Program-made: the position numbers and the translations under genes
Origin: Perna viridis
Lineage: Eukaryota
Assembly (NCBI GenBank): GCA_037379345.1
Contig: CM074512.1
Location: 47,389,597 to 47,453,596, forward strand
Length of the DNA: 64,000 bases
Direction of reading: 5' to 3'
Notes under the pieces: generated by a model
Databases searched by the model: none
What the model was told of the DNA's origin: nothing
What the model saw: only the letters and a program-made list of their open reading frames with translations
Shown here: piece by piece, positions 681 to 57,502 of the stretch
How the letters are laid out: each line of letters starts with the position of its first letter
Position numbering within the stretch: position 1 is the first letter of the stretch

Positions 681-1222
681 GATTAACTAAAACTCAAAGA
701 AATCACAGTCTAGAGTTTGAAACTACCATTCTGAGTAATAGAATTTACTTAGGAGATAAAGGTCTAAAGCATAAAGAACACTCTTATTCCTTTTTTTATC
801 GGGTCCTTCTACATGCAATTCTCTTACAAATTTATTGAGTATCCAACATGAGGACGCCTGGGGTATGTGAACATGCTCACTAAGGTTCTTTAATGTTGAT
901 TTGTTTTTATGTTGTTCCATTTAAAACATAATAAGTTAAACAAATAGTAATTTAATTGATGTACCTATTTTGGATAAAAGCCAAAGCGTATACTGTAAAA
1001 CTACTAATTTTCATGGTATACTTATTTTCACTATTTTTGCAGTGGACAGAAAACAACGAAAAAATAGAACCCATGAAATTGATTTTTTAAACCTATACAA
1101 CGCTAATAATGTTTCATACCGCTAAATATGATACCTGTAATTATGTTCACTTGAAAATTAACATCCACAAAAGTTAATATAATTTACAGTGTTGTACTTC
1201 ATTTATGATTTGTATTATGTAG

Positions 1223-2749
1223 GAGGTAAGAGGCTACCATGAGGAGTGTAAGCAGGAAGAGTCCCGCTACCACTACCTCAACTGCATGATCAAGATGATA
1301 GAGATGCAACAACAGAAAGTTGCTGATGAAATGAAAGCTTATACTTCATCTGATCCATACACTAGGAAAAAGACTTTCAGGTTAGTAGTGGTGCACCGAT
1401 CATCTGGAACATCAAGTCGTTTGGGAAGCTTCAATTCAATGATTGATTTCAAGATATTGAGATTGATTTGATCATGTATTAAAAATATGAAGATATTGTC
1501 TTTATCCTTCTTTTTTGAAGTCATCTTTTGTCATTTCTGACCGGACTATTTATCTTTTTGTTGACAGATATTTTGTTCTATTTTAGATCATTACATTGGA
1601 CAATTATATTTGTTGTCTGTCGGGTGTGGGTGAACAGGCCTCAACTCAACATGTGGCTTTATTGATGATGATTTCACTCATTTACGTAGGATATAATAAT
1701 ATCAAAGCTAGGTCATGGTGACACTCTGGCAATATGATATTGAAGGGTCATCTTAATCAAATTCCCAAACACCTATCATCTATCATAGGTTGATGTTGAT
1801 ACAACAGTCAACAATCATCGATCCAGAAATTTTTTTTTCAATTTCCAACACTACAGGCTAGGCTTTTACACTGTTGGAAAGTAATATGAAACATACAAAA
1901 ACATTTAGCTAATTTAGTTTAGAAAATTTAGAATAACGTAGCTGTAATATGAAAACAACTTTATTTTATTTCATCACATAAGAAATGTTGCATAAGGTAT
2001 ACATTCCAAATAGTGAGAATATTTTCGCCAGGGTCTGATTTGGGATTTATATGCAAGGTTTTGGGAATCACAAAAATAGAAGCTTGTCAAATTGAAGTTC
2101 AGATATCATACATATAATTTCATTTCCATGAAATCTGAAGATTCAAAACAAAGACAGTGAAAATTTAATATCCATATTCATGGAGCAAAAGTTTGAATTT
2201 GGCACCCATGAAAATTACCAGTGATATGGTATTTCATTGGTTTGTCACTGTCAGTCTGTTCTTGTTCATATTTATGTAAATATTATTAAATTTGACCTTG
2301 TTTGACAACATCACATGTGATCTTAGTAACTCGCCACAATTTCCAATCTGAAACTGTTACACTGAAAATGGAAAAAAAAATCAGTTTTTAAGACCTTATG
2401 AAAAAATGGCAAAAAACGGTCACAACATGATTGTTCATTAATTGATGAATTTTTCTTTTTTCATGACGTATCAAAATTTCATTGCAATAACTTTAATTAC
2501 AGAGAGTTATATCAGAGAAAGGTACAAGAACAAGAAAATCTTGGTAAAGGGTTGAGAGAACAACAGAAAACTGTTCGGGAAAGTCATGGCCCTAGCATGG
2601 GTCAAATGAAAATGTGGAAAGATTTGGAACGGCTTCTAGAATGTAAACGTCAGTGTAATGAGAGGAGGGATGGCATGATGGCTCAAGGAATATCTGCTTA
2701 TGGAGAATCTGCACCAGCTGTTCTAGAAGATGATCGCTTAGTCTTGTGA
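1223..2749 (+). CDS. IFT81: Intraflagellar transport protein 81, last two coding exons (1223-1380, 2503-2749); the 5' part lies upstream of the window
   Basis: AG/GT-bounded exons join in phase 2 to give [44 protein letters not shown]...[52 protein letters not shown]...EDDRLVL*. This matches the IFT81 C-terminus (EESRYHY, RESHGP, MWxDLE, DRLxL). AATAAA at 2840. Confidence 0.93.
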
Positions 2750-4182
2750 TAAAGAACTTGAATGATAATTTGTTACTAATCTGAGATATACAATTGTTTT
2801 ATTTATTAGATGTATGAAACATTCCAATGCTATCCGTCCAATAAATGTCGTGTATTTAATTAGTTCTACAGTTATTTACTACTGAGGTTGTTGAATAATG
2901 ATCTTGCCAATCCACAAGGATAGAATAATTTGTATTACAAGATTACTGTTTTAAATACACTTTTGTATTTTTTTTTAATTTATTGAAACTTATAATAGTG
3001 TAGTCAAAGAAGAATATGTTCTTACATTATTTCAAAATGGAGACTGTAGAGTCTTCAATATATTTTTCTAAGTGTATTACAGCAGAATGAGGTCAAAGAT
3101 GACAATTTTATATCATGAATTAAGTTTTCCAGTGAAGTACACATTCAGCTCATTTTGTTATATCCCTTTTTAGCTATTGTCATCACTTGGCATCCTTCTT
3201 CATCTGTCGTCTGTTGACAATTTTTCAAAAATCTCCTCAGTAACTACCGGGCAGAATTCCATGAAACTTCATATGATTCTTTCTGAGGGTTTTCTGCACA
3301 AAATCTAAGCTTGGATTTTTGACTATTGGAGAAACATGGCTGCCGTTACTAATGACAGAACATAGTGTTCACACAGCAGTTTATGCATGTATCATCTAAA
3401 TTGTTAGGTGAAGCTAAATGCTGATGTTGGTGAAAGTGTTATGATCAAATCTGTCTGTGTAAAATTTTAGTGAAAATCTGTTAACTCATATTGTAGTTAT
3501 TGCCCTTATTGGATGTTTCTTTATAATCCCTCTCTACTAGCAACCATTTTGTATATCCGTTGCACTTTCCTGTAACAGATATCTCTGCTTCTATTGGCAG
3601 GAATGCTTAGATATTGTGTTAATTGCTTTTACCGTGACTCGTCTTTTCAGGTACATTGCTTATCCACTCCCTGTTTACTGATCTACCTTGATGTTTTTAT
3701 GGTGTGTACTTTAATTGAAACTTCGTAAAAGATTCCTTACCTTCTATTGGAGATATTAGTTGTATTGATTTGTATGATGGTTTGCACCATGTTTCCCATC
3801 TTAGGTTTGACTGAAATGGTTGAGTGGGGGTGTTCTTATCAGAACGTAGCATGCAACATCTTGTTTGTTGCTATTTTTGATGTACATTTGAATTTTCAAA
3901 ATCTTTGAAGCTAATGGACATAATGCTATGAAAATTTGAATGATTGTTCATTTCCAGCAGAAAGTTAATGCTTTCAATTTTTATGGTAATACAAAAAAAA
4001 ATAAATAAAAAACAAAAAATAAAAAATAAAAATAAAATCTAAAAAAATGAATGTAGCTTATCAAGCCAGTTGAAGGTTTTTTGGCCCATTAGAGCCTTTA
4101 TTTTCAATTTTTGAACAGTTCATAATGTATTTACTACCAAGGATCTTCTTTGCAGCGGCCAAGTCTTTAGTTAAGGTATAAC

Positions 4183-4775
4183 TTTTAGCTTACCAAGTCA
4201 AAGACCATATGAGTAATGGTATTAATTGGGGTCCCTCGCCCGTCTTCATCTGTCCTCTGCTGCGTTAACTTTTGAAAAAATATTCTCCTCTGAAACAGTG
4301 GAGCAATATCAAATTTGGTCACCAGCATTCTTTAGGAATCTGATTAAAGAAAGTGTTAATTTTATAGATCAACCATTAAAAATGCCTGCTATTGCTATTT
4401 TTAGAGAGCTCTACAAATGTATCAATTGAGTTGAAGTTGTAGGATGACTCCTTCGTAGAGTAATTGCTACTGAAAGGTGAAAAAGCCTGTTTTTTTTTTG
4501 TTGTTTTTTTTTTCAGTTTTAACCAATATTGTGGAAACCATAATAGAACTTCATGTTTATTTATGAAATGATCTTTATGATAAGGCCCACAGAAGTCTCT
4601 TGACTTGGAGTTACTAAAAAAGGATGACCTCCTGATATAGTTCTTTCTAAAAAGGCTAAAAAATGACTTTTTTCACAGTTTTCAGCCAATATCTTGAAAA
4701 CCATAATAGATGAAAACAAATTCCAAATTGATGAAATGACCTCAACGATAAAGCATTTATAAGTAGCCTCTTGTA
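4183..4775 (+). mobile_element. Non-autonomous Helentron-associated (HINE/pearl-like) element, degenerate
   Basis: Begins TTTTAGCT, has a GTC-rich stretch and internal repeats shared with 5278-6145 and 20075-21765, and ends GCCTCTTGT. Confidence 0.55.
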
Positions 4776-5277: not shown

Positions 5278-6145
5278 TTTTTAGCTCACCTGCCATCACT
5301 TGGCGTCCATCGTCGTCATTAACAATTATACAAAACTCTTCTCCTCTGAAACTACATGACTAATTAGAATCAAATTTGGTATGAATGTTCCTTGGGGTAT
5401 CCTGCATAGAACTGTTGTGGGGATTTTTGATTCGTAGAAAAACATGGCCGCCGTTACTAAAAATAGAACATAGGGGTCAGACTGTAGTTTTTCGCATATA
5501 TCTTCTAAACCGTTAGATTTAGCTGAATTCTGACTAAGTAAAAGTGTTCAGTATGATGAGATCTATATCTGGTCAAATTTTGGTTTTAATCCGTTAAGCC
5601 ATGTTGTAGTTATTGCCCTTTTTCAACGATTTTTGCTATTTTTAATGTTATTTCTTTCCAAAATCTTCTCCTCTGATACTACTTGACCAATTGAAACCAA
5701 ACTTGGTATGAATGTTCCTTGGGATATCCTGCATAGAACTGATGTGGGGATATTTGATTCGTCAAAAAACATGGCCGCCGTCACTAAAAATAGAACATAG
5801 GGGTCAGACAGTAGTTTTTCGCATATATCTCCTAAACTGTTAGGTTTATCCAAATTCTTTCAATAGCTGAAATGATCCGTATTATTAGGACTACAAAAGT
5901 TTTCAGACACCTTGTAAGAGTTATTGCCCTTGAAAGGAGGAAAATGACTTTTTTTAAATAGTTTTCATTCAATATCTTGAAAACTACGACAGATTAAAAG
6001 AAACTTTCAATTGTTGAAAAGATCTTGTGATAGTCCTACCAAAGACTTCTTTAGTCAAAATTGTCGGACAACTTCTTGTTTAATTTATTGCCTTTGAAAG
6101 GCAAAATTCAAGGTGAGCAAATCAGGCTCCAGGGAGCCTCTTGTT
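5278..6145 (+). mobile_element. Non-autonomous Helentron-associated (HINE) element
   Basis: 5' TTTTAGCTCACCTG and 3' AGGTGAGC subterminal inverted repeats; terminal palindrome GGCTCCAGGGAGCC followed by TCTTGTT; internal ~330-bp direct repeat (about 5340 vs 5670). Confidence 0.8.
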
Positions 6146-6399
6146 TGTTATTAATTTTTGTGATTTGATTTCGATTGGGAGGGGTTTGCGAATTGCTCGG
6201 AGCAAAAGTTTTAGTCCTGGATGATTTAACATACATTGTCGTCCTCCCTTTTTATTTCAAATTTGATTATACCCCCCCCCCCCCATAATTGCCCCCTGAT
6301 GATGTTTTGTGTGTTTTCATGGTCTATTCTTAGTCCCCGGATGAATATCCTATTTCTGGTTCTAACCATAATCTCATTGCTTTCACGTTCTAAATAAGA

Positions 6400-9300
6400 A
6401 TGATTCATAGCCAAAGTACTAAGTAAGGGAAATGTTTGTGGTGTATTCTACTCGGTCTAAATATAGCCCCGCCAGGTAAATTTTCTATAGCTTGCATGAC
6501 AATTTTTTCGCTTGCTCATTTACTTTGCCAATATCCACCCTCAACAAGACATGGTTCATCAAAGAAATCACGTTCAAAGCAAACTCGATGTTGAGGATCG
6601 CTTTCCTTTGGCTCCGGTGGAAACAAAAATACACTCCACGATGGCGTTTGGAAAATGTACTTCTCTACACCTGTCATTCCAAATTTGATGAACTGTTTTG
6701 TGCTTTCTACGTTTGCAATCCTATGATCTTCAATGTTGAAATTCACCATTGCGGCATTCATAAATACGGCATCAAAAGCATTGCATAATGCATTGTAGAT
6801 GTCTGGGGCAATTCCTGCTCTGTCCTGTGACAAATCCGAGATTACCACGTTGACTCTTGTCGAATAATTGCATTTCCATAGATTGTATCGCCTCATGTTT
6901 TCTTTGATTCGCCCAAGACCATTCGCCTCCGTTATCTCTCGGACCATGCAATAAAGGCGTGCATTTGTTTGCTCAAGTAGCTCAGACAATAAATATGCTC
7001 CAAAGAAACCAGTGACCCCAGATATCAAAACGTTTTTGGGATACTTATGGTTGCTATTAGCAGTACACGAAGAAAGGTAATGACATTGGGTTGTTCTTCG
7101 TGTTTCATGCTTTAAATATAAAACTGAGTCTAATTTTGCATCCTTAAGAATCAATTCTCGTAGGTCGTGTTTTTCCTTTGTAGTGCATTGAGACGTTTTC
7201 CTAAAGATATCCTTTTTGTGTTTTATGACTTCAGCAAATTCGTCGATTGTATCTGCTCTGTCCAAGTCTGTGAACGAAATTTGTACGAGTAAATTTTCTT
7301 TAAGTAGTCGTTGAAGGAGTACTAAATGTAACGAATTTTCTCCTAGCTCGGTGAATGAGCTCTGTCGATGAAGAGTGTAAGCAAATGATTCTCCAAATTG
7401 CAGAAGACTACACCACATCTTGGCGATTGACAGCTGAATTTCATTGAGATAACTAGCTCTTACGTACTGCTGTTCATGTACCGACTCATCTTTTTCTAGT
7501 AGTTTTCTATCAATTTTTCCGTTGATTGTCATAGGATAGTCCGTTATCTCGATTTCTTGATGTATGTCGGTATCATGTAATTTGGTACGACTTTCACGAG
7601 ATATTCTCTCAGTTCACTCAGTGAAAACGAATGAAGACGAAACATATGCTGCGATGCTCAGTTCTTTAAGCTTCTGGCATCTATGTACAACTACTACAGC
7701 CATGTCGATTTTAGGATGCTTAAGAAGAACGTATTCAAGTTCAATCTGGTTGACCCTTTGACCTCTTATCTTAATCATATCATCTAATTGTCCAATATAT
7801 GTCAAAGTACCATCCTCATCCTGAAACGCATGATCTCCTGTCTTGTATAAAAGCATGTCACCAGTTAACGATTTCTTGACGAATTTTTCATCGTTGTAAT
7901 GACTTGCGTGTCCAATATAACCTTTAGACAGTCCTCAACCTCCTACATATATCTCACCAACGACACCAGGAGGAACCGGTTGATGAAAGTCGTCAAATAG
8001 GTGAACATTTGTACCTGGTATAGCTTTTCCGATAGGGATATATCTATTCACATCTTCGTGATATAAGCGCTTTGTGAACTCGTAGCTTGTAACACGAACT
8101 GTCGTTTCTGTGGGACCATACGCATTAAAGAATTTGATTTTCCTATTTGTTGACGTCCATTTAACAGCAGTGTTAAGCGTGCAAGGCTCTCCAGCTGTAA
8201 TTACTTTCTCTACGTAAGGCAGGTCAGTCGGTTTGTAAACGTTTATTGCTGAAGGTGGCAAAGTAATTACATTTACGTTGAGCCTTTTCATGGACACTAG
8301 AAATTCTTGGCCAAGTCGCTCGTGTTCACGTAGAACAGCTAATGTTGCCCCAGACAAAAGAGCTGTAAATATTTCAGATATGGTTGCATCAAATCCAATT
8401 GAAGCAAACTGTGCTATGATATCATTTTCTTGTAAATTCCAAAGTTTAATCTGTGCCTTTGCGAGATTGACAATGCTTGATTTAGTAACCTGTACTCCTT
8501 TTGGTCTGCTTGTTGATCCTGACGTATATATGATGTAACCAATGTCATCGTCTAAAAGCGTCATAGAGGCCCGATCTTTCGTATTACACGGTGATTGGTA
8601 ACTGGTTTCTTGTTCGAATTTTACCATTATCAATTTTTCTTCTCCAACCAAACCGACTAGCGTTTTAGTGTTTTTCATTTTAGAAAAATCTGTCGTATCA
8701 TATTTTTCTTCAGTTGTTAACAGAATGGTTATCTCGGCATCTATCATTGTGAATTCTAATCTTTCCAGTGGGTAGTCAAATGGCAGTGGTAAATATGTTT
8801 TGTTGGAATGTATTGACGTTAGTACAGAAATAACAGGCCAAAGAATTTGGTAAATGTAATGCAATAACTTTATTTCTGGTTCAGTGACAGAGCAAGATTC
8901 TTAATCGCAGCATAGCATTCTTCGTAGGTCATGTCACATTTACTAGAAGTAACTGCTTTGTTGTTAGGTGTAGCCTTGCACTGATTTTCAAAGACTGTAA
9001 ATAGTGGAACATGTTGAAAATCGCTGTAGTTTGAAATTCGATAAAGTTTTTGCAGTTCATCTTGTGTAACCATTGACACTGACAGAAGGAGAATGTTGCA
9101 CTCTTGGAGGACAATTTTTCCATATTCGCTTACTAATGCGCTATCATTTAAACATCCCAGGACGATGTTATGGTGTGGTACTTTTTTTTTCTGATTCCGA
9201 GTTCTGGGTATCGATAGAACATATCGATTAGGAAAGATTTGGATGAATAATGCTTCTTCAGTGATTCATAACATAAATTCAGAATTGAAGAAAGTTCATC

Positions 9301-9602
9301 TCGGATGTTGATTTTGAATAATCCTGTACCAATACCAGGGTACGGGGATAGTGTTTCGTTTGGTATCTCATTTTCATCCGCCAGGATACCTACACAAACG
9401 GTCTTCACACAGCAGATGCGCGCCATGAACGCAAGGAATGCTGCTGATAAAAAAATCTTCATACTGTTAAATTCTACCGAAAGAGGGATTGGTGGAAATG
9501 AAAGTGCTGCTTTTTGAGGTTTACCTCAGTTGATACGTCTATAATTCCCTCTACGCCATTCATGCGTTGCCGGAGGAATGTTGTGGGCTCATAAGACGCC
9601 AT
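6400..9602 (-). pseudogene. Intronless NRPS-like reductase (partial C-like region / adenylation / PCP / terminal NAD(P)H reductase), copy 1, disrupted
   Basis: A-domain motifs YTSGSTSRPKG, FDATISEIF, NAYGPTETT, GEIYVGG*GLSKGY, YKTGD, DDMIKIRGQRV and NGKIDRK; PCP FTELGENSL; reductase GVTGFFGAYLL, YCMVR and GYWQSK (YxxxK). ORFs 8864-7935, 7856-7614 and 7532-6516 share one frame split by TGA stops, with more frameshifts and stops between 9602 and 8864. Putative ATG at 9602 (MASYEPTTF). Confidence 0.9.
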
Positions 9603-10496
9603 TTTGTTTCTCCAATATTGTCCCCTTTTCCCTTACTTAAGCTTAACTCACAATGTTAAATTCGACACACCTGTGTACATTCAATGATCTTTGTAAATGT
9701 TCGGAACTGGACGTACACCATCAATATTTGCGAACGTCACAAGAAGAGATACACTTGCAGTGATAAATATTAAAGTGTCATCTACAATATGGCGTCTGAT
9801 GTCTTGCAGCGTTCATTGATGTATAAGAAGCTTTGGCATTGATTAAAATGAAAAGGATTCAGCACAAATAATATGTTTTAGGCATGCAATAGAGTCCTCG
9901 AAATCCTTCGTTCTTGCTATGGTAAATCGCTGACTTATCCTGCAGTCTAGCGCTGTGGTGGTATCGTGGCTTTATCCTTAATTGATAATCAAATAATAAC
10001 GATCATTTTCGGTTACGTCATAATGTCGATTACTCCGAGATCGTGTGACATCTTTTTTTACAAAAAGGCAGTTTTTCATCCTGAAGAAACATTTTGCAAA
10101 TATGAAGTTCTCAACATGAGATTTAATCAGGTAAATAAAACAAAGAGAGAGAAAAGTTAAAAAGATGCCCAATTCTTGAATCCTTATATTCCTTCATTTA
10201 ACAATTTGTTAGTTCCTCGATGTTTCCTCACTGGTGTTTTGATTAAATTATAAGAGTAATAACTATGAATTATGATGAATGTAGCCCAAGTCTATACGGT
10301 TACGTAATCATGTAAATGTATGAAAGAGTTTTTTTGATGGGAAAAACTATTATGAAATATTGAACGTATAATTAATTTTAATGTATCAAAATAAATGCCA
10401 GTGTACAAACAATCATTCAAATCCTATAACAAAGGTTAAAAACACAAAAGAAAAAAGGCTTATGATGGTAAATTTTCTTTGTATATGTATTTTAGA

Positions 10497-15260: not shown

Positions 15261-16529
15261 TACAGATGCAGTGTCTTAAAATATTAAGGTAATGTGCGTG
15301 TATTTTGTTAAAGCCAAAATCTTCAGATAGACCTTGCACTGCATAATCAAAAAGCACATCATTCAATTTCACCTGCATGTGTTATAGTTTTATGAGTCAT
15401 TTAAACAACTTGTATTTTTCAGTACTACTAGACCCATATATTTGTGTAATGGCTAAATCAGATAACTAGCAAGTCCCATCCTTATTAAATGCAATGCTGG
15501 GAAATATTCTAAATAAACAAAAATTGAAGACTTTTGGTAAATAACATTTTTATCATCTATTGTAAACTTAGACAAAAACAAGTATATTACAGTTTTCAGC
15601 ATGTGTTGTTAATTGAAAATATGTGTATTATGTATATATTAAATGACAAACAATGATATGAATACATCGGTTGAAATTAGGTTTTTGTACTGTTTACAAG
15701 TAACATATTGTAAACAAGTCTTATCTTAAAAAAAGATAGCCAACTGAGTAAAACTTGTTCTTTTTACTTGCAACTTTCTACATTTCATTCAGGAAATAAC
15801 TGCATCGGAAAAAAGAATACATGTTACAAGTATTTGTTGGTACATACAATGTATGTGTAGCATGCAATACCTATACTTTATCTGTTGTTCCATAATTATA
15901 AACTGATCCAAAAAGTTCAAACCTTAAGTTAGTAACATGAAAATAAACATACATTACACAGAAAAAAAAGGTAAATTATCAGGGCTATGAGCTCACGGTA
16001 GATTCATACCTATTTATCATTAACTAACAGAGTACAAAGAACATTTTACAAATATTGTACATCAGTTTTCAGTAATTACATTACTGTATAAGATCTATTT
16101 GATATAAAATATGAAATGAATTAAATGATAGACATACTTTTTATTCAAACAACTTAAGAATCATTGCCAATAGTTTGTAGTACATCTATTACCAATGATT
16201 CTAAATTAATGTTTTCTTCAAAAGTTTTTTTGAATAAAAAGTACAATATAACAGATCATACAAGTATAATAAGTATCAGGACTATTCAGTGAAATAGATA
16301 TTTTTACAGAAAGACTAATATCTACATTCTATATTATATTCTTATAATCTGCTGCATCATATTTCCTCAATTTGGCATTAGGTACCGTAGAGAAAATGTT
16401 TCTGCAAAAGATATAAATATATACACACAGTCTAATTAAAATTAGCCTCTCCGATTTTTATTTGATACATCAAAAATAAAAAAAAAACGCAAGGTCTAAT
16501 TTTAATTAGACTGGATTGAAGCCATCACT

Positions 16530-16899
16530 ACAGAAGTTTTATGGTCGTTATCATGAACTCGTGTATTGTTACGGTGTATCCATCTGCGCCATGAAAACGG
16601 ATTTGTTTAACGGGTCATAGTATTTCTTTCCTCTTTCGTCTACCGCGGACGTGACTTTTTATGAGCAACTCGGTGGGTGTTTCTAGAAAAGCAGAGGACG
16701 CTTACCCTACCGGTGCACCTGGTCCATGCTTCAATTTTTTAGTGGAGTCCGAGTTGCTCATTTGCTTTTGTTACTTTGTATGTATGGTTTTAGTTACTTT
16801 ATGTTCTTTGTTGTGTATGTCTGTTTTCCATGTCTGGTATTTGTTCCTGGATTACATTGTTTTGATTACCGCTATAACCTTGGTTCCCTTGATTATTCT
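16530..16899 (+). mobile_element. 3' fragment of a Penelope-like retroelement
   Basis: Encodes the ORF tail KFYGRYHEL...YGVSICAMKTDLF, followed by the GAGCAACTCGG...CCGAGTTGCTC module and the terminus CTTGGTTCCCTTGATTA(C/T)TCT; related copies at 38289, 40561 and 56790. Confidence 0.7.
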
Positions 16900-17199
16900 T
16901 AGCCAATATCTTGAAAACCATATTAGATAGAAAAAAAATCAATTGATGAAAAGATCTTAACGGATAAGGCGTATATAATTTGTTTGAAGTTTGAAGTTGT
17001 AAGGTAACATTTTGTAAGAGTTAATGCCCTTGAAAGGCAAAACATGAACCAGGTGAGCAATTCAGGCAACTGGTAGCCTCCTGTATTGTTATTCACTACT
17101 GTGATTAGCAGGATTGGCAGTTTATGTGGTAGCAATTAATGTACATCTTGTTTTAGCTTAGCTTGACCAAACCATTGGTTGATAAAGTTATTTATAAGA

Positions 17200-18694
17200 A
17201 TGGAATGACTCATAGCCAAATTACTATGTGAGGGAAATGTTCGTGGTTTATCCTGTCTTTCGAACCATGAGTTTTTCGTTTAAAAAATATAGCATTTATA
17301 TTGCTTTCCTTTGGATCCGGTGGAAACTAAAACAAACTCAAATATGACGTTTGGAAGATGTACATCTGTACACCTGTCATTGCAAATTTGATAAATTCTT
17401 TTGTGTTTTCTACGTTTGCAATTCTATGATCTGCGTAGTTTGTGTTGAAATTCGCCATTGCGGCATTCATATAATAGTATACGGCATCAATCGCATTGCA
17501 TAATGCATTGTAGATGCCTGAGACAATTCCTAGTCTGTCCTGTGACAAATCCGAGATTACCACAGTGACTCTTGTCGAATAGCTGAATTTCCATTGATTG
17601 TATTGCCTCATGTTTTCTTTGAGTTGCTCATGACCACGCGCCTCTGTTGTCTCTCGGACCATGCAATAAACGCGAGCGTTTGTTTGATCAAGTAGCTCAG
17701 ACAGTAAATATGCTCCAAAGAAACCAGTGATCCCATATATCAAAACGTTTCTAGGATACTTAAGGTTGCTATTAGCAGTACACAAAGCAAAATAATGACA
17801 TTGAGTTGTTCTTCGAGTGTCATACTTTGAATATTAAATTGAGTCTATCTGCATCTTTCAGAATCAATTCTCGTGGGTTGTGTTTTTCCTTTGTAGTGCA
17901 TTGAGACGTTTTCCTAAAGACATCCTTTTTGCGTTTAATGACTTCAGCAAATTCGTCGATTGTATCTGCTCTGCCCAAGTCTGTGAACGAATTTTGTAGG
18001 CGTAAATTTCTTCAAGTAGCCGTTGAAGGAGTACTAAATGTAACAAATTCCCTCCTAGCTCGGTGAATGAGCTCTGTCGATGAAGAATGTAGGCAAACGA
18101 TTCTTCAAATTGCAGAAGACTACACCACATTTTGGCGATTGACAGCTGAATTTAATTGAGATAACTAGCTCCTACGTACTGCTGTTCATGTATCGACTTA
18201 TCTTTTTCTAGTAGATTTCTGTCATTTTTTCCGTTGATTGTCAAAGGATAGTCCGTTATCTCGAGTTTCCTGATGTATGTCGGTATCACATATTTTGGTA
18301 CGACTTTCGTGAGATATTCGCTCAATTCGTCCGTGAAAACAAATAAAGGTGAAACATAAGCTGCAATACTATGTTCTTTAAGCTTCTGTCATCTATGTAC
18401 AATTACTAGAGCGATGTCGATTTTAGGATGCTTAATAAGAACGTATTCAAGTTCAATCTGGTTGACCCTTTGACCTCTTATCTTAATCATATGATCTAAT
18501 CGTCCAATATATTTCAATGTACCATCCTCGTCCAGAAATGCATGGTCTCCTGTCTGTATAAAAGCGTGTTACCAGTTAAAAAAATATTCTTGCTGAATTT
18601 ACCATCGTCGTAATGTCATGCCCAATGTAAGCTTTATACAGTCCTAATCCTCCTACATATATATATCTCACCTACGACACTAGGAGGAACCGGT
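17200..18694 (-). pseudogene. NRPS-like reductase, copy 2 (end of A domain, PCP, reductase), 5'-deleted
   Basis: Colinear with 6392-7980: YVGGLGLYKAY, GRLDHMIKIRGQRV, FTELGGNLL, GITGFFGAYLL, NFNTNYADHR; frameshifts present; fused at 18694/18695 to sequence matching 9944 onward. Confidence 0.9.
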
Positions 18695-20074
18695 AGTCTA
18701 GCGGCTGTTGTAGTAACGTGGCTTTATGTTTACTCGACAATCAAATAATGCCGGTCAATTTTGGTTACATCATAATGTCGTTTACTCCGAGATCGTGTGG
18801 AAACTTTTTCACAAAAAAAGCAGTTCCTGAAGGAACATTTTGCAAACATGAAGTTATCAGCATGAGATTTAATTAGGTAAATAAAACAAAGTTAGAAAAA
18901 GTGTTGAAAAGGCCCAAATTCTTGGATCCTTATTTTCCTGCATTTTAAACCACATTTTAACATTTTTTTGTTCTTCAATGTTTCCTCATCGGTGTTTTGA
19001 TTAGATTATAAGAGTAATGACCATGAATTATGTTGAATGTAGGCTAAGTCTATACGGTTACACAATCATATTAATGTGCTTAAAGATCTTTTTACGTGAA
19101 AATGCATTGTTATAAATTATCAAACGTTTACTTGTTCACATAACTGTAATACAGAAATCATTCTACTATATATAAATCAATTTGTACATCATTGGTCACA
19201 AAGAAAACGTCTTAAACAAAAGGGTAATCATTGACAAGCTAGGGTTTCCAATATTGTTATTGATGAAGCAAACTATGTGTCTTAGCGGGGTGATGGCTTC
19301 CTTGAACAATATCTGGACATTGTACAAGTAAGGTCACTTGTTTCCAAAAGCACTGTTTGCAACTGTAAAAGTTAAATAAAGAAAAGGATAATTAAATTAC
19401 TTCGTATGATATCCTGTGAGCTTGTTTAGGGTATCGATAATCTAATATTAAACTTGGGGTAAGAAGAAACCTGGTGTATTTGGTGGAAAAAGTAGCGGAT
19501 TTATACGATTCGATCTCTTGATGGAAAAAAAATTGGACAGTAAAATAGAATTTTTTTTCCAAAACAGAGGTAATTAAAATGGCGTTGATGTGATCATGAG
19601 ATACTCCAGCATTGCTCCAGGTTGTCTGGCAAGCTATTTCCGTCTTGTTACCAGCAATGCTTTATGCTTTTTCTGAATTGGTTGCCTGGAGCATCTGACA
19701 TGTTGAAAGTCACCGCAAATTTGTTTAGATCAAACACGTGTGTTAAAATATTTTATGTCTTTTGAAGTTTAACCTACTGGTAATTAAGAGAAAACATCAT
19801 TAAATTTGGTTAAATCCAAAGTTTTCAAAGTGGCCATCCATTTTGAACAAGGTCACTAGTTTTACGGATGCAAAGTATTTTTGGCGAAACGAAACTGTAA
19901 TTGGTAAGGAAATTTAATGGCTTATTCTAAATTTTCGTCTTGCAACTAAAAATGCGCAAATTTGTTAACCGGATGTTACAATGCAAATTGCTGAAAATCG
20001 AATGTAAAGTTCATTTAAACTGCTTTTGCAAAGGATTTCCAGAATTGCAGGTGTTTTCTTATCAGGTAGTATTT

Positions 20075-22076: not shown

Positions 22077-25000
22077 TCACTTAAGAGATTTCTGTTTGAC
22101 TAGAAGTCCTGTTACAAAAATAATAACCGCGATAAATTCACAAGCTGCCATGAAGTAGAAGGACGTCACATAAGTTCCTGTTACATCTCTCAGATACCCT
22201 ATAAAAGACAGGATTTTATTCAAACTAATTGAAAGCCACAGACATTATTATACAAGTTGAGATGAGAAATAATTGGAAGGGTATAGTTCAAGTTATTAAC
22301 TTGTTAACTGATATAACAAAATTACATAATTGCATGAATTTCTGTTTTTTTTTCAATTTTGAATAAGATAGGGTAAATATTTGCTTTAATGATAATTTGA
22401 AAACCCCAATAAAAAGTTTAAAAGAGCTATAGTTTATCATTTTCCGCTATTTCGTTAATTCTGTTACATGTATGTGCTAGTTCACACTGTAGATTTGCAC
22501 TATAAGGATATGTAATATTTTAAGTGGTTATACTTTTTCCATCCTATATAATATTCTGACAAAACTAGATCACTTAGTATAAAATCATATGCAATTTCTT
22601 GCTTTATTTAGGTCGATCCATGCTCATGTTTTAGGCATCGTTGCAAAATATGTTTGTACTACTATGCTCATGTCAAGCTCCAACTTAATTGTTTCTTGTC
22701 TTTGTTAAGTTAATAAAATTTAGCGAATGAAGACACACTACTTATTTCATTGGCAATTTAACTAATACTTAATAGTAAATAGGTTTCAGTGCTAATTATA
22801 GCTTGTTACACACATTATTTACCTATTAACGGCGCAGATGTTCCCAGTGATAAACCTTGTCCTAAAATAAGGATTCCCATTGCAGACCTGAAGTTTTCGA
22901 TACCAAGAAAATCAGCAACAACTGACGGTGTCATGGCAAAAATTCCTCCAGCACACAGTCCCGCTGTTATTGCTAGAAGAATAAAATGCCAGTATTCTGT
23001 GTAAAACGGTGAGATAGCTAAGCAAATACCAGTAGCAGCCATGGTTATTATAATTGCTTGGTGATTTTTCACAATGTTTCTATCGGTAATTATTCCATTA
23101 AGCAGCCGTCCTAGGAAGTCTGATGCATTTACGAGGGACACCAAGCTTGCAACTTTTTCTGCACTGACTCCTTGGTCTTTTGCAAATGGGGCAATGAATA
23201 TGATAATGTATGCAGAGCCAATGCTTCCAAAAAAGAAAACAATCAGATAAACTGGCATAAACCAATTTTTGAAGAGACTTAAATCAACCAAAAACTTTAA
23301 CTTTTCAGTACAATTGATGGATGCTTCACTTTCAAAAGAATCTTGAGAACTACATAGGTCAGTCCGTAGTTCAGTAAGAGATATACTGGCCATGTCACTT
23401 TCGCCTAACAAACGGGTGATGTTAGAGCTCGATATTTTATCTAAAAATCCTGTCAATGATCCAGAATGTTTCTGACATTCTAAATTTTGATCAGAAATGA
23501 AAGTTTTTTGCATATCGTAAAGGTCATTTCTCTTGTCTGATTGGTTATGCTGACTTTCACTATAACTTCTGTCCCTTTCTTTTCTTAACAATGGCTTTTG
23601 TAACACTTTAGTGTCGCCCTTGGCTCTAAATTGTAATACAATATTTTCTTTTCTGTCGTTCAATTGGTCTTCAGAATCTTTCTCCCGTGGTCCAGCAGGA
23701 TATGTTTTTGAAACTTTCGGTCGGAGAAGGAGAGCAAATACGATAATATGTAGCTGTATTCCCCCAGTTATTAACATGCCACCGCGGAGTCCATATTCTT
23801 TGATTAGATACGAATAAATTGGCGGGAAAATAAGTCCACCAAAACTAAACCCAGCAACTACAATAGCTTGTGCCAAGTTACGTCTTTTTACAAAGTACAG
23901 TCCATTGAGGTAGGTAAGAGGTCCGTGTGTAAAACCAAATGCAATTCCTGCAAATAAAACTAACAGTATGTAGCTTATGAAATATAAAAAAATTCTAATA
24001 AACAATTAGAAAATTTACATTCTTTGATATTGTTCTTTGAACTAACACAATCTCTGATTCGTTCTTTTCTTTTGTAAAATCTCTATGTGTATTCTATTTC
24101 TTTCGGAATCCAATTAAAGCAGACGTTTTTTTACAACATTCATCGTTCATAAACAGCGTCATTCTTGACAAAAAAATCAGTTTCTATTATACATGGAATA
24201 GACGAACTAGTATACCATAGCCAATGACCCACTGATGACTGAACGAATCTTACCAATCATAACTCCGTTGGTAATGATAAGAATTCCAACAGATCCAGCA
24301 AAACTCCCAGAGATGAAGGCAAGACTTGCAAGTAAACCTGTGATGGTACAGAACTGTCTTGTGGAGAAATAACGTAAACCAATAGTCATTGTCGGCAATG
24401 CTGAAGAGGATACAAGGAAGTGTGATCAACAGTTAGTCAGAAAGTAACTTTTTTTGTATTTTCATTGGTTTTGTTTTGAATTGACCACATTTTATTCCTT
24501 GTTTTTGATATTACATTGCAAATTGTTAATAGTTGTTATTTACTTTTTAAGTTAAAGTAGAATTTTTTCTTAAAAAGGTGAAAGTTTTACTAAAATACCA
24601 GTAACACAAAGACTTACAGAGTATACTATAAGTTCCCTGAAGAACACCTGGAATAACAGCAGTTACGGACGACTGAGCCCCAAATTCATCTACGAATCCA
24701 TTGAAAAACACACCAAACCCTTTTATTATAGCACCAAATGTACAGAAAAGGCAAGCAGCAGCTGAAATTGAAAATTATAAAGACTTTCAACTGAAATTAT
24801 AACGTCCATTGCATGTTTTGGCATGTTTTATTTTACTTTTCATGATGTTAGAATGTCCGGAAATGACATATAAATCCCATGAAAGGCCATTTGTTGATCT
24901 AAAATCTCACTACGTATTTAATATGAATTTAGGCTATGCCTATTATGGACAGAGTGCATTCTTTGTTTACGATAAAATCGGTCATGTTGTTATGGGCGAA

Positions 25001-36044: not shown

Positions 36045-39000
36045 TCATGAGCTCATAGGAACAAAACTCATCACAAGTCCCCCGATAACAAGCACAGAAC
36101 CAATAGCATAGAATGTAACATTGTAGTTTCCTGTTAGACCATAGACCATTCCTGAAAGAAATTTATTTACTTCATAATTAAAACAACGCATAGAAACAAA
36201 ACAGAATGAAAAACGAATGAATAGCAATCGGGAAAACTACAAAGAAAAGGCATCACGCACTCAACTAAAGAAAAAAAATACAACTCAAACAGATACCACA
36301 AACCTACCACAACAAAGTTGTGCACGGACCAGGTACAGGGTAGTCGTGCTGTCTTATAAAGACTCACCGTGTTGTATCTTTTCTAGAATGATCCACCATG
36401 TTGCTTTTGCCATGAACGGCTTAAAGTGGACAAGCTAATGAAGAATGAGGAGTACACCTCTTACTGTGACTGATATATATATATATAGTGTAAGAATTCA
36501 AAAATGACAAAAGTTCATTTACATTGTAACCATAGAACTTTTGAAATGGTGACCTGCTTGGTTACACAACCTGCATTCCTAAAATAAGTTTAAAACGGTT
36601 CAAATTATTCATGTTAACACGGCATTATCATTAACATACATCGACTTTTTTTCCAGATGTCCGGGATTACCGTACGGTCACACGAACTTTTTTAAAAAGT
36701 AACAGTATGATAATTCTTTTAACAGCAAAATATATTTAAAACAAAACCGTAAGGAAGTATGAGCTTAATTCGATTTCTTACCTACACCAGGCGGTCCTAT
36801 AAACGACGCTATTCCTTGGAACCATAAGGTAATTCCTACTGAATCTGTGACCTGGTCCGTTTTTACAATATCCATCAACAAGACGATATAGAGACAATTA
36901 AATACACCTACATGAAATAGCAAGTAAAAACAAAAACAATTTAAAAAATATAAAACCAATAAATAATCATTACTATAATAAAAAAAAAACTGAGCGCTAC
37001 TGGTGAAAATATCGAATTTAGGATGCACAAGGAACAAATTGACTCAGAAAACAGGTATTTTCGGGTGAAATAGAATATAAGTGTTTTTAATCTAAAAAAA
37101 AAAGACGTCTTATGTGATTTTATCTTTCACTCTTTTAAAATAGACAGAAAAAGCAGACAAAACAAAATAAAACAAAAGGATGACATGTAGATTATCCGAC
37201 TAATAGTTTTAAATCAATATTGAAAATGTAAGGACCATTTAGATGCCGTTTTATTCATAACAGTTTGGTTCAATGAAGCAATGAAAATACTTTCATACCA
37301 CTGAAGCATTGACCATATAGGTTCTTACTACTTAAGCAATTAACATAGTTTCTTACCACTGAATATCCCATACATTGCTGCGTATGTGACCAAATACGGA
37401 ACACTATCGTTAAGCGGGCTAGCTATTGTAACAATTCCACTGATGACAACGGACACAATATATAAACACTTTCTGTTTACAAAAGGTCGATCAGATAGCC
37501 AACCAGATGCCACACGACCGAATATATTCGAGAATCCTATGACAGAAATGAAAAGCGCTGCCTCTGATTTAGTTCTTCCCTTCTCAATAGATCGGTCTGG
37601 TAGATAAATATATGGAGAGTTCAACCCAAGAACAACAAAAAAGCATGATGCGACAAATACTAGAAAAGCAGGATTCTTAAATACTGTAAAATCATAAGAG
37701 TTAAGTATTGCTCTACGCAATTTTTGACAAGGATTTTTACTAGCAGAATGTGTAATTTCAATGTGATTTTCGTATAAACAGATGTTTTCTTGAATCAATG
37801 AATTACTTTCATCTTTTGTGCTATCAAATTCTTTCACTAATTCTTTCGGAATTGCACTATCTTCATTTTTCCATGACTGTTTTACTTTAGTCCGATTTTC
37901 CATCACGAGCCTTTTCCGTAGCTGCTTTTTATTTAAATACCTTGTTTTTCCACTTATAAGACGAGAAGATCTCAAAGGTCTAAGAAGTGCTCCAACCAGT
38001 ACTATATTTAGAATAATACCGCCAATAATTAGTGAGGTGCCTCTCCATCCGTATTCTAACAAAAGTCTTTCCACCATTGGAGCACATACAAGAGTTCCAA
38101 CCCCTACACCACAAACTGCAATTCCCATAGCAAAGGATTTTCTCTTGTCAAAATAAATTCCAACACTAACTACAAATGGGATAAAAGCTAGACCCATACC
38201 AAGACCTGAAATATAATGAAATAAGAAATAATTTGAAATTGAAAATTCAATGGAAGAATAATCAAGGGAAGGTTATAGAGGTAATCAAAGAGTAATCAAG
38301 GGAACCAAGGTTATAGCGGTAATCAAAAGAATGTAATCCGGGGACAAAGACCAGACATGAAAGAGTAATCAAGGAAACCAAGGTTGGAGCGGTAATCAAA
38401 AGAATGTAACCCAGGGACAAAGACCAGACATGGAAGAGTAATCAAGGAAACCAAGGTTTTAGCGGTAATCAAAAGAATGTAACCAAGGGACAAAGACCAG
38501 ACATGGAAGAGTAATCAAGGGAACCAAGGTTATAGCGGTAATCATAAGAATGTAATCCAGGGACAAAGACCAGACATGGAAGAGTAATCAAGGAAACCAA
38601 GGTTATAGCGGTAATCAAAATAATGAAACCAAGGGACAAAAGGTCTATATGATGAAATGTATAATTATTCATTCCAATCTGTCTGCTCTTAGGAAATAAA
38701 CCACATGGAAATTACCAATAGTTTCTATTGTATTTTAGTGTTATTTACAGAGTTATCTCCGTTAATTTTGAATTCTACAGTAAATTCTATATAATACGCT
38801 CCCCAAGGAAGCGTGTATGGTTGTATTATCAACTTGGTTCTGTATACTTATGGCAAGAAAAAGTATCAATATCCGGTTTGTACCTGCATTTTCAGGAGCT
38901 GAAAAACAGCATAATGGCAGCTTCATTTGCGTATACTTGTATATGTGCGATTGAGCGCCAAACCAGTCTCGGAAAATATTTGCTAGTTTCGATAATTAAA

Positions 39001-43800: not shown

Positions 43801-45149
43801 ATGTTAATCCAGAATTACCATATGCTTAACTTAACCTACATATGAAAAAGGGGAAACTCGATTACAACAAAAAACATATCCAGGAAGACATTTTATCACA
43901 AAGCATACCTTGGGTAGGAAAGTTAAGACATGCATTCAATTTTAACAAAACAGTTTCCATAGAAATCGGGTTTCTAAGACACTTGTTTCGCACTACTGTT
44001 TAACAATGAAAAACAAAAGTGGTCATCGCACAGAAAATTTGAATAAGTGTCAAGCAAATCAGCACAAATGCACCATACAGGCAAGCACCAATGGGTAACA
44101 TCAGTCCAAACAGATAAAAAGAAAAACAGGTTTATGTTTTAGATAGTTTATTTGATAAATTGACAGTTTCTCCGGAAATCCAGTTATCACAGATTTACTC
44201 ATACATGTAACAAAATACGCGGCTTCTCGTCAAAATCCCAGAAATTCATAAACAGTCTGATTCAGTTGATTGTGGTTTATAGGTTACAGACCACCAATTC
44301 AACCAATGAGCATTTGGAACGTACGCAAAAATAGTCCTACGCAGAAATTACCCCTGTTCCTCATAGTGCTGTGAAAAAAGTTCTCATCTCATTTAAAAAA
44401 TTTAAACAGTTTCTGAAAGGAAAAACATTTCTGTACATTTTATAGGTGCATTTTGCTTCTTGTGATGTGAAGCCTAATCTCCATAATGATTTCTAAATAT
44501 ACCCCTATCTTGTGAAAACACTGGGATTTCCCATGCTATTTATAGACACTTCACTTCCGGTGACCAGTACTGCACTGCAAGTCTGCTAACCCCACATGCC
44601 ATTCTGAGGATTGTGAGCTGACATATGTAGAATCATGCTGATATATAGTCCTCTGCAGGTTAAAGTTAAGGTAAAGTCCAGAGAAGCCATTGAATATTGT
44701 GAAATTAGCATAGAAGCCTATGGGAAGTGGAATTAGTGGTTTTTAGCCTATATGCCATTACAAACACGGTTGAATTCTGTATTAGTGGTTTTACTGGAGT
44801 CTTCATATTCAGTTCGAAGAAAAATATATGAAAAAACTGAAAAAACTGAAAAAACTTTATTCAAGAAAACACTCAGGCGCTTGATAAGCGCTACAGGAGC
44901 GAAAATGAAATAATGAATTAACACAAATTTACAATGCAATAAAGTACATGATTGATTAGTATGATATATATCAGATTAGAAGTCCTATAGTATTTTAGTC
45001 AAGGAAGCGAAATGAGTACAACACGCCGATTACAAAAAATAAAAAAAGTAAAAAAAATTAAACTACTTTTTAATTTATCAATTACTTATCCATCAGTCAT
45101 GTGACCTAGAGGGGTATGATGGGCGGTACCACACCTTTTATGGATGAAT

Positions 45150-56789: not shown

Positions 56790-57086
56790 TATTCAACGGG
56801 TCATAGTTTTCCTTTCCTTGTTTGTCTACCACGGACTTGACTTTTAATGAGCAACTCGGCGGGTGTTTCTAGAAAAGCAGAGGACGCTTACCCTACCGGA
56901 GCACCTGGTCCATGCTCCCAGTTTTTAGTGGAGTCCGAGTTGCTCATTTGCTTTTGCTACTTTGTATGTATGATTTTAGTTACTTTATGTTCTTTGTTGT
57001 GTATGTCTGTTTTCCATGTCTGGTCTTTGTCCCTGGATTACATTCTTTTGATTACCGCTATAACCTTGGTCCCCTTGATTACTCTT
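56790..57086 (+). mobile_element. Penelope-like 3' terminal fragment
   Basis: Highly similar to 16605-16899; same terminus, followed by TTTATATATA. Confidence 0.75.
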
Positions 57087-57502
57087 TTATATATATGAAA
57101 AAAAACCAACCCCAATCAAATTTGGGGTTTTGATGATGCAGCCACAAACATAGCATATTGCCGAGTGATTTTTGTCATTAAGGTTGCTTTAAACACTTAC
57201 TTGTAATATGTAGTCATTCGTTTATAAGTTACCCATCACGAAATATCACGAAATATAAATAATACATAGGAAATCATTATACACAATTAGGATTTTTTTT
57301 TAATCCCACTACACCAATAAACCTTGTCGTGACCTTACTTATGAAGTTCATTTTCTATTTCATGAACCCAAGGATGAGATAATATCAAACGAATACTTAC
57401 GATTGTATAATTATATGATAACGAGGCATAATTTGATAATATGATGATTTAACCTCTTGCTAGTAGGTCCAGCGATCAGTTGAATTACAAAGATATCCAG
57501 AG

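What the first reader, a model, noticed from the sequence alone, without database searches (positions are those of the whole stretch)
6400..9602. Intronless bacterial-style NRPS (A-PCP-reductase) embedded in an animal chromosome
Seen: a near-complete set of NRPS adenylation motifs, a PCP and an SDR-type terminal reductase in one ~3.2-kb intronless unit, between spliced animal genes (IFT81, SLC16) and mollusc-type transposons, with host-like AT content. Known: the familiar animal NRPS-like enzymes (Ebony, AASDH) do not end in a reductase domain, whereas A-T-R enzymes (Lys2, carboxylic acid reductases, fungal LnaA-type) release aldehydes. Inference: an old horizontally acquired aldehyde-forming NRPS family in this lineage, implying uncharacterised secondary metabolism.
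Basis: partly seen in the sequence, partly recalled or inferred. Interest (0 to 1): 0.85.

Follow-up and report, generated by a model that had tools for sequence, protein, structure and literature searches.

The report
Dead copy of mollusc FmtATR synthetase
The stretch is a broken, cut-off and apparently silent duplicate of a mollusc enzyme gene (FmtATR of the bursatellin/oxazinin pathway) that was described in 2025, while the working copy sits 9 Mb away on the same chromosome, so the finding is real but ordinary.

Summary
The NRPS motifs are real. On the minus strand, window 6454-9790 matches Pfam AMP-binding, PP-binding and NAD_binding_4. It is not a gene, though. Against an intact 1637-codon paralogue 9.2 Mb away (C2:56591812-56596725) it covers only codons ~300-1476. 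It carries 5 in-register stops, 8 frameshifting indels and a 141-nt deletion, and it lacks the formyltransferase domain and the end of the reductase.

A second, shorter dead copy lies at 17300-18694. The two share flanking sequence, so an already truncated fragment was duplicated in tandem. Substitutions on the dead copies fall evenly on codon positions (14:17:18 and 18:28:23). On the intact lineage they fall 5:2:23.

Independent DNA contigs confirm the locus and its breaks. A raw RNA-seq run shows no reads over it.

The family is known. It is FmtATR of the mollusc bur-ox (bursatellin/oxazinin) cluster (Venugopalan & Schmidt 2025, PMC11869996). That enzyme is Fmt-A(Tyr)-T-R, and its R domain makes the alcohol tyrosinol, not an aldehyde. 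The intact paralogue sits beside a p450, a methyltransferase-type ORF and two FMO genes, as in that cluster. In a tree the family follows mollusc phylogeny, with bacteria outside.

Verdict: pseudogene of a known family, low interest.

The parts
6454..9790 (-). psi1: truncated, decayed pseudogene copy of FmtATR. It corresponds to codons ~300-1476 (CDS nt ~898-4428) of the intact 1637-codon paralogue.
   Evidence: blastn: 86.4% identity over 2665 nt plus 80.7% over 724 nt to C2:56592308-56595830. tblastn: 78% aa identity over 823 aa. Indels and stops are listed.
8990..9790 (-). Decayed copy of the spacer that in the intact protein folds as the C-terminal lobe of a condensation domain. Carries three stops (9681-9683, 9643-9645, 9637-9639), four frameshifting indels, and the 141-nt deletion junction at 9082/9083.
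   Evidence: tblastn to paralogue aa 300-654. Indel and stop lists. Fold of the intact spacer.
7938..8900 (-). Adenylation core (motifs A2-A8). It ends at the stop 7935-7937 inside motif A8. Deletions of 23 nt and 2 nt lie at its 5' edge (after 8880 and 8835).
   Evidence: Pfam AMP-binding, E 1.2e-47..
7467..7934 (-). Small C-terminal subdomain of the A domain (A8-A10). It is broken by a +1 insertion at 7620 and a 1-nt deletion after 7553, which give the out-of-frame stop at 7614-7616.
   Evidence: Translations. Indel list.
7224..7418 (-). Carrier (PCP/T) domain remnant. The serine motif reads 'LGENSL' where the intact copy has 'LGGNSL'.
   Evidence: Pfam PP-binding, E 2.9e-4, residues 66-130 of piece 6519-7613..
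6454..7025 (-). Thioester-reductase (NAD_binding_4) remnant. There is a stop at 6516-6518 in place of the W of 'SKW'. Homology ends at 6454, about 160 codons before the parent's stop.
   Evidence: Pfam NAD_binding_4, E 1.4e-26, profile positions 1-134 of 258..
17300..18694 (-). psi2: second, shorter pseudogene copy (parent codons ~962-1425). It has 4 in-register stops and 5 frameshifting indels.
   Evidence: It is 89.1% nt identical to psi1 and 85.2% to the intact gene.
9944..10373 (.). Upstream flank of psi1. It recurs directly at the 5' edge of psi2 (18695-19133, 78% identity) and nowhere else in the genome. This marks the tandem duplication of an already 5'-truncated fragment.
6398..6449 (.). 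Downstream flank shared with psi2 (17203-17254, 86.5% identity). The 3' truncation therefore predates the tandem duplication.
5291..6147 (.). High-copy interspersed repeat next to the 3' side of psi1. It is not part of the gene.
   Evidence: Many blastn copies in the 210-kb bur-ox region. Read depth is 10^3-10^4 times that of psi1.

Best explanation
Window 6454-9790 (minus strand) is a non-functional partial duplicate (psi1) of this bivalve's FmtATR gene. FmtATR is the monomodular NRPS of the mollusc bur-ox (bursatellin/oxazinin) pathway.

History. A fragment of the single-exon parent gene, covering CDS nt ~898-4428, was copied from the bur-ox locus at C2:56.59 Mb to this site between IFT81 and MFS transporter genes. 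The fragment lacked the formyltransferase domain and the last ~160 codons of the reductase, so it was dead on arrival. It was then duplicated in tandem, giving psi2 at 17300-18694. Both copies have since drifted neutrally and collected stops, frameshifts and deletions. All of this happened after the split from the Mytilus lineage.

Function. psi1 makes no enzyme. The working gene is the intact 1637-codon ORF (probable ATG at codon 30). By homology to the characterised family it is inferred to do four things: load tyrosine on its carrier domain, N-formylate it with the Fmt domain, release it by a four-electron reduction as N-formyl-tyrosinol, and hand that product to the neighbouring ACT, p450 and FMO enzymes.

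Shown here: homology, the breaks, neutral drift, the cluster context of the parent, and the absence of RNA reads in one run.

Inferred: the order of events, and the chemistry, which is taken from PMC11869996.
For: Domains and breaks.

Intact paralogue: a single 1637-codon ORF with Formyl_trans_N, AMP-binding, AMP-binding_C, PP-binding and NAD_binding_4.

Copy number: only three loci in the genome hit A or T-R queries. The Fmt and R-tail pieces occur once.

Neutral drift: substitutions by codon position are 14:17:18 on psi1, 18:28:23 on psi2 and 20:11:18 on the shared stem, against 5:2:23 on the intact lineage. Over the whole psi1 block the figures are 92:68:80 against 24:19:74.

Tandem origin: psi1 and psi2 are each other's nearest relatives (89.1% nt; SH-aLRT 100). 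They share both flanks and a 3-nt gap relative to the intact gene.

Tree: (psi1, psi2) groups with the intact copy (99), then Mytilus (100), then the other bivalves and gastropods, with bacteria outside (100).

Independent confirmation of the breaks: contigs of DNA run X3 cover every bin at 44-122x. They reproduce the stops and indel junctions without gaps at 7751-7996, 8402-8936, 8918-9315, 9364-9605, 9605-10400 and 6088-6594.

Expression: raw RNA run X21 has 0 reads over 6244-9785.

Parent locus: a p450 ORF, a 403-aa methyltransferase-domain ORF and two FMO genes lie 26-45 kb from the intact gene. This matches the published bur-ox cluster.
Against: Contigs of two runs guessed to be RNA (X11, X14) cover 8988-9768 at depth 2.6-4.6, so trace transcription of part of psi1 is not excluded.

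Only about 19% of one raw RNA run, from unknown tissue, was read.

The direction and mechanism of the copying (DNA-level duplication or a retrocopy of an intronless mRNA) cannot be told, because both ends are truncated.

Polarising substitutions with a 75%-identical outgroup is rough.
Confidence: 0.93

Rival explanations
1. psi1, or its 5' part, is a transcribed pseudogene whose RNA acts on the intact FmtATR, for example as an antisense or small-RNA source or as a decoy.
For: Low-depth contigs in runs X11 and X14, from two studies and guessed to be RNA, cover only 8988-9768 and not the flanks. psi1 is 81-86% nt identical to the parent.
Against: Raw RNA-seq run X21 has zero reads there. The RNA nature of X11 and X14 is only a guess, and the depth is 2.6-4.6. 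Substitutions look neutral. No strand information is available.
Confidence: 0.04
2. It is a working, shortened A-T-R enzyme gene whose apparent breaks are removed by small introns, recoding or readthrough.
For: Long open stretches remain (309 and 338 codons). The core motifs, the PCP serine and the Rossmann GxxGxxG are still recognisable.
Against: Stops sit inside indispensable motifs (A8, and the SKW of the reductase), where splicing them out would destroy the domain. There are 8 frameshifts and a 47-codon deletion. The reductase is cut at profile position ~134 of 258. Codon-position usage is neutral. There are no RNA reads. The intact paralogue needs no recoding.
Confidence: 0.02
3. It is bacterial contamination or an assembly misjoin, not host DNA.
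For: The nearest non-mollusc relatives are bacterial NRPSs. G+C is slightly above the flanks.
Against: Independent DNA run X3, from another study, covers psi1 and both flanks at the same single-copy depth, with contigs that bridge 6088-6594 and 9605-10400. Host repeats abut the copy. Its nearest relatives are the same genome's intact gene and mollusc orthologues.
Confidence: 0.01

Closest known systems
FmtATR of the mollusc bur-ox (bursatellin/oxazinin) gene cluster (Venugopalan & Schmidt, J Am Chem Soc 2025, PMC11869996)
   Same: psi1 descends from this genome's FmtATR. It is 78% aa identical to it over codons 656-1476. The parent is 78% identical to the Mytilus californianus protein and has the same Pfam domains. 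It has the same Tyr-type specificity residues, D-A-S-T-I-A-A-V-C-K, read. It sits in the same cluster context of p450, methyltransferase-type ACT candidate and two FMOs.
   Different: psi1 lacks the Fmt domain and the reductase tail. It is broken by 5 stops and 8 frameshifts. It lies 9.2 Mb from the cluster with no bur-ox partner gene in the window. It is not detectably expressed. The parts of the paper that I searched do not mention pseudogenes or duplicates.
Bacterial Fmt-A-T-R proteins, e.g. Legionella maioricensis 'amino acid adenylation domain-containing protein' (P0091, 1552 aa)
   Same: Same domain order including the spacer. It is 29% identical over 95% of the intact mollusc protein and colinear over the Fmt_C plus half-C spacer.
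   Different: It is a distant relative on a very long branch outside the mollusc clade. Its product is unknown.
Linear gramicidin synthetase LgrA initiation module (F-A-PCP; PDB 5ES5, 6MFZ) and LgrD terminal reductase
   Same: LgrA is the best solved-structure match for the A-T part (E 3e-138). It has the same logic of N-formylation of a carrier-bound amino acid, and in the LgrA/D system, reductive release. NCBI names many mollusc orthologues 'linear gramicidin synthase subunit D-like'.
   Different: In LgrA the A domain starts at about residue 206, right after F. In FmtATR it starts at about 613, after an extra half condensation domain. LgrA is multimodular.
   Same: Adenylation, carrier and NAD(P)H thioester reductase on one chain. 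The NCBIfam profiles match only in part and below their cut-offs: TIGR03443 scores 295 bits against a cut-off of 1030, and the CAR profile scores 112 against 1300.
   Different: These enzymes have no Fmt domain and no half-C. FmtATR's A domain is of the amino-acid (NRPS) type (TIGR01733, 322 bits against a cut-off of 317). The family's R domain gives the alcohol by four-electron reduction.

Membership tests
FmtATR (bur-ox NRPS), as a functional member | One uninterrupted reading frame encoding Fmt-A-T-R | tested here: not met
   psi1 has 5 in-register stops, 8 frameshifting indels and a 141-nt deletion. The intact paralogue at C2:56591812-56596725 does meet the feature.
FmtATR (bur-ox NRPS), as a functional member | N-terminal formyltransferase domain | tested here: not met
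   tblastn finds no match in the window to parent codons 1-299. The Fmt piece occurs once in the genome, in the intact gene.
FmtATR (bur-ox NRPS), as a functional member | Complete thioester reductase domain | tested here: not met
   The NAD_binding_4 match stops at profile position 134 of 258. Homology ends at parent codon 1476 of 1637. The tail occurs once in the genome.
FmtATR lineage, membership by descent (pseudogene) | Nests inside the mollusc FmtATR clade, next to the same genome's intact gene | tested here: met
   ML tree of 37 A-T-R regions, with the psi copies read with X at every break. (psi1, psi2) has support 100, with the intact copy 99, with Mytilus 100, all molluscs 100, and bacteria outside.
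FmtATR lineage, membership by descent (pseudogene) | Tyrosine-type A-domain specificity residues | tested here: met
Read by motif landmarks from the translations. The link from code to tyrosine rests on the Stachelhaus code and on my own knowledge. No predictor was run.
bur-ox gene cluster | Neighbouring act (isonocardicin-synthase-like methyltransferase), p450 and two fmo genes | tested here: not met
   For psi1: there are no FMO hits in C2:47.39-47.45 Mb, and no significant tblastn hit of the cluster's ACT, p450 or FMO ORFs in the window. For the intact gene the feature is met.
FmtATR (bur-ox NRPS) | [quoted passage not shown] | not testable with these tools
   The biochemistry is reported for the T-R construct 'CvTR' of a bivalve homologue in PMC11869996.
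Carboxylic acid reductase / Lys2 type aldehyde-forming A-T-R | Profile score over the curated cut-off | tested here: not met
   The intact paralogue scores 112 bits against a cut-off of 1300 for NF041592, and 295 against 1030 for TIGR03443.

The most novel reading that the evidence does not exclude
The two tandem FmtATR fragments are kept as a source of non-coding RNA that tunes expression of the intact bur-ox synthetase. A ~0.8-kb part, 8988-9768, appears at trace depth in contigs of two runs guessed to be RNA.
Probability: 0.03. Interest if true: 0.4.

Novelty: new member of a known kind. Interest (0 to 1): 0.15.

Why it matters
It matters little for biology. It does matter for annotation. 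Gene predictors and BGC miners could call this locus a second 'A-T-R' NRPS and inflate this bivalve's biosynthetic gene count, or read it as a fresh HGT.

The useful results are three:
- The real FmtATR gene and its bur-ox neighbours are located at C2:56.59-56.64 Mb.
- The gene has spawned dead partial copies in this lineage.
- The family's Fmt-A spacer appears to be the surviving C-terminal half of a condensation domain, and this layout is shared with a Legionella protein. That bears on which kind of bacterial gene was the donor of the old transfer proposed in PMC11869996.

Tried and rejected
Functional gene with small introns or recoding: rejected. The stops sit inside core motifs, codon usage is neutral and there are no RNA reads.

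Contamination or misjoin: rejected. Independent DNA contigs bridge both borders at single-copy depth.

Large segmental duplication of the bur-ox neighbourhood, suggested because MFS genes lie near both loci: rejected. The MFS ORFs are only 24-25% identical. blastn homology between the two regions is limited to the CDS fragment and interspersed repeats.

Gene fragment carried by a multicopy transposon: rejected. The upstream flank occurs only at psi1 and psi2. Part of the downstream flank holds a short common repeat.

Missing 5' or 3' pieces displaced elsewhere: none found in the window or in the genome.

The psi copies were read in the parent's codon register with X at every stop or gap.

Other notes on this genome about NRPS: none.

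Not done:
- species identification (names are coded);
- synteny in other mytilids (no animal genome collection is on hand);
- the SLC16 subfamily assignment of the MFS ORFs;
- the C-terminal IFT81 exons inside the window.
Full report
1. WHAT IS IN THE SEQUENCE

The NRPS-like signal lies on the minus strand. ORF listing and three-frame translation of 6400-9602 show the coding signal hopping between frames and crossing stop codons. Pfam on the separate open pieces gives:
- AMP-binding for 7938-8900 (E 1.2e-47);
- PP-binding (E 2.9e-4) and NAD_binding_4 (E 1.4e-26, profile positions 1-134 of 258) for 6519-7613.

They do not form one open reading frame.

2. THE PARENT GENE

A six-frame search of the window's own genome finds one intact relative on the same chromosome. 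With the A-core and T-R pieces as queries it matches at 79-82% aa identity, and it has a 1657-codon open frame. After fetching it (L007), the ORF from its first start codon is 1637 codons, at C2:56591812-56596725 on the minus strand. The probable ATG is codon 30, which matches the start of the Mytilus californianus protein.

Pfam gives this domain order:
- Formyl_trans_N (79-201);
- AMP-binding (616-982);
- AMP-binding_C (1041-1116);
- PP-binding (1147-1214);
- NAD_binding_4 (1281-1523).

NCBIfam passes the cut-offs for the amino-acid adenylation domain and the thioester-reductase domain. It falls far below the cut-offs for Lys2 and for carboxylic acid reductase.

3. HOW THE WINDOW COPY DIFFERS

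tblastn of the parent protein on the window maps codons 300-1476 to 9788-6444 (psi1). At the DNA level psi1 is 86.4% (2665 nt) and 80.7% (724 nt) identical to the parent CDS, and psi2 is 84.0% identical.

In a four-way nucleotide alignment psi1 shows:
- frameshifting indels of -13, +1, -1, +2, -23, -2, +1 and -1 nt;
- in-frame deletions of 141, 3 and 6 nt;
- five in-register stops, at 9681-9683, 9643-9645, 9637-9639, 7935-7937 and 6516-6518.

The last two stops sit inside the A8 motif and the reductase 'SKW' motif.

psi2 has five frameshifting indels and four stops.

The Fmt piece and the last 162 codons of the parent each occur only once in the genome, in the intact gene.

4. NEUTRAL DECAY AND HISTORY

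psi1 and psi2 are closer to each other (89.1% nt) than either is to the parent (86.8% and 85.2%). All three are closer to one another than to M. californianus (70-75%).

Substitutions unique to each lineage fall on codon positions 1:2:3 as follows:

| Lineage | Positions 1:2:3 |
|---|---|
| psi1 | 14:17:18 |
| psi2 | 18:28:23 |
| shared psi stem | 20:11:18 |
| intact lineage | 5:2:23 |
| whole psi1 block, psi1 lineage | 92:68:80 |
| whole psi1 block, intact lineage | 24:19:74 |

The copies have therefore drifted without coding constraint from about the time they arose, while the parent is under purifying selection.

The sequence just upstream of psi1 (9944-10373) recurs directly at the 5' edge of psi2 (18695-19133, 78%). 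The sequence just downstream (6398-6449) recurs at 17203-17254. The upstream flank exists nowhere else in the genome. This means a fragment already truncated at both ends was inserted here and then duplicated in tandem. psi2 later lost about 2 kb at its 5' side.

Whether the first copy was made at the DNA level or from mRNA cannot be told. The parent CDS has no intron, and both ends are missing.

5. IS THE LOCUS REAL, AND IS IT EXPRESSED?

Contigs of an independent DNA run of the same species (X3, another study) cover every bin of 6244-10400 at 44-122x. They bridge both borders (6088-6594 and 9605-10400). They also reproduce the stretches that hold the stops and indel junctions. None of the listed differences falls on a stop codon (28 further differences were not shown), and the only gaps listed inside psi1 or at its edge are a 1-nt polymorphism at 9182 and a 3-nt one at 6272. 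So the breaks are not assembly errors, and the locus is host DNA.

A raw RNA-seq run (X21, about 19% read) gives zero reads over 6244-9785. It gives many reads on the adjoining high-copy repeat.

Contigs of two runs only guessed to be RNA (X11, X14) cover 8988-9768 at depth 2.6-4.6. This is unexplained: it could be trace transcription or stray DNA.

6. WHAT FAMILY IT IS

A search with the intact protein finds full-length relatives with the same Pfam set across molluscs:
- bivalves: M. californianus at 78%; pectinids at 57-58%; unionids, venerids, Dreissena and Mya at 51-56%;
- gastropods: Haliotis at 50%, Aplysia at 41%.

Many are named 'linear gramicidin synthase subunit D-like'. Bacterial NRPSs follow at 27-35% identity.

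A maximum-likelihood tree of the A-T-R region was built with the psi copies read with X at each break. It puts (psi1, psi2) with the intact copy, then Mytilus, then the other Pteriomorphia, the other bivalves and the gastropods. The molluscs form one clade (support 100) against the bacterial sequences. The tree is a quick LG+G4 search, and the bacterial branches are long.

The literature search found the family already described. Venugopalan & Schmidt (J Am Chem Soc 2025, PMC11869996) name it FmtATR. Their account:
- Domains are Fmt, a tyrosine-activating A, T and R.
- It is clustered with an isonocardicin-synthase-like aminocarboxypropyltransferase (act), a bacteria-like p450 and two animal-type fmo genes. 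Together these form the bur-ox pathway to bursatellins and oxazinins.
- A bivalve T-R construct reduces N-formyl-tyrosyl thioester by four electrons to the alcohol.
- They propose an ancient HGT that predates the split of the molluscan classes.

In this genome the intact gene has these neighbours:
- a p450 ORF at 56624677-56625387 (-);
- a 403-codon ORF with a methyltransferase domain at 56627750-56628958 (+);
- the genome's two best FMO matches, at 56634113-56636451 and 56639376-56641174 (+).

The window holds none of these.

The specificity-conferring residues, read by motif landmarks, are D-A-S-T-I-A-A-V-C-K in the parent and ...V-R-K in psi1.

7. A SIDE OBSERVATION ON THE FAMILY

In LgrA, the closest solved structure, the A domain starts at about residue 206. 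In FmtATR it starts at about 613. I folded codons 190-615 with 17 mollusc homologues (pLDDT 82).

Model residues 160-406 superpose on the C-terminal lobe only of NRPS condensation domains: EntF 184-434, LgrA 957-1200 and SrfA-C 197-447. The VIA Z-score is 17, with rmsd 3.1-3.5 Å over about 215 residues. No N-lobe with the HHxxxDG site is present. The part before it aligns with the Formyl_trans_C-bearing region of bacterial proteins.

The Legionella maioricensis Fmt-A-T-R protein is colinear over the whole spacer (23% identity, E 7e-19). The layout Fmt-(half C)-A-T-R therefore also exists in bacteria. The 5' end of psi1 (9790 to about 8990) is the decayed copy of this half-C part. I did not see this described in the parts of the paper I read.

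8. SURROUNDINGS

- IFT81 CH-domain exons lie at C2:47378695-47381085 (+), just before the window.
- MFS_1 ORFs lie at 22818-24005 and 37343-38197 (-), and a reverse transcriptase lies at 45539-48070 (-).
- The MFS ORFs here and near bur-ox are only about 24% identical, so no large segmental duplication links the two loci.
- An N run at 45248-45376 was left alone.

9. VERDICT

The domains are real, but the 'unit' is a broken fragment.

An old bacterial-like NRPS lineage in molluscs exists, but it is published and partly characterised. It is inherited vertically within Mollusca, it makes an alcohol rather than an aldehyde, and this particular copy is dead.

The copy is a new, ordinary pseudogene member of a known family, and interest is low.

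No step needed referral.

Noticed in passing
window 17300-18694 (-): Second FmtATR pseudogene fragment (psi2; parent codons ~962-1425, 4 stops, 5 frameshifts).
   Followed up: yes
L007:5881-7158 (-) = G000:C2:56594881-56596158: The ~400-residue spacer between Fmt_N and A in the intact FmtATR folds as the C-terminal lobe of an NRPS condensation domain without the catalytic N-lobe (Z 17 to EntF, LgrA and SrfA-C). A Legionella maioricensis Fmt-A-T-R protein (P0091) is colinear over it. This suggests a bacterial Fmt-(half C)-A-T-R donor type.
   Followed up: partly
G000:C2:56591812-56641174 (L007, L021-L023): Apparent complete bur-ox cluster of this genome: intact FmtATR (-), p450 ORF 56624677-56625387 (-), 403-codon methyltransferase-domain ORF 56627750-56628958 (+), and two tandem FMO genes at 56634113-56636451 and 56639376-56641174 (+). 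The C-terminal half of the p450 was not located.
   Followed up: partly
window 8988-9768: Contigs of two runs guessed to be RNA (X11, X14; different studies) cover only this part of psi1, at depth 2.6-4.6. A raw RNA-seq run has no reads there. It may be trace transcription or stray DNA; the strand is unknown.
   Followed up: no
window 9182 and 6272: Indel polymorphisms inside or at the edge of psi1 in other individuals' data: 1 nt left out at 9182 in X3 and X11, and 3 nt left out at 6272 in X3.
   Followed up: no
window 16514-16900 and 56780-57090; also 44276-44750: A short interspersed repeat has dozens of copies at 80-95% identity in the 210-kb bur-ox region. A 474-nt element has three copies there at 98-99% identity, so it was probably active recently.
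   Followed up: no
window 45248-45376 and 45539-48070 (-): A run of 129 N lies just below an 844-codon reverse-transcriptase ORF (RVT_1, E 9e-34).
   Followed up: no
L010:6000-6668 (-), L012:4626-5234 (+), L012:8086-8478 (+): Cys-loop receptor exons (Neur_chan_LBD hits for the first two; the third, seen only in the ORF list, begins with nearly the same residues as the second), in two or more copies, 60-85 kb from the bur-ox NRPS. They are probably unrelated neighbours.
   Followed up: no
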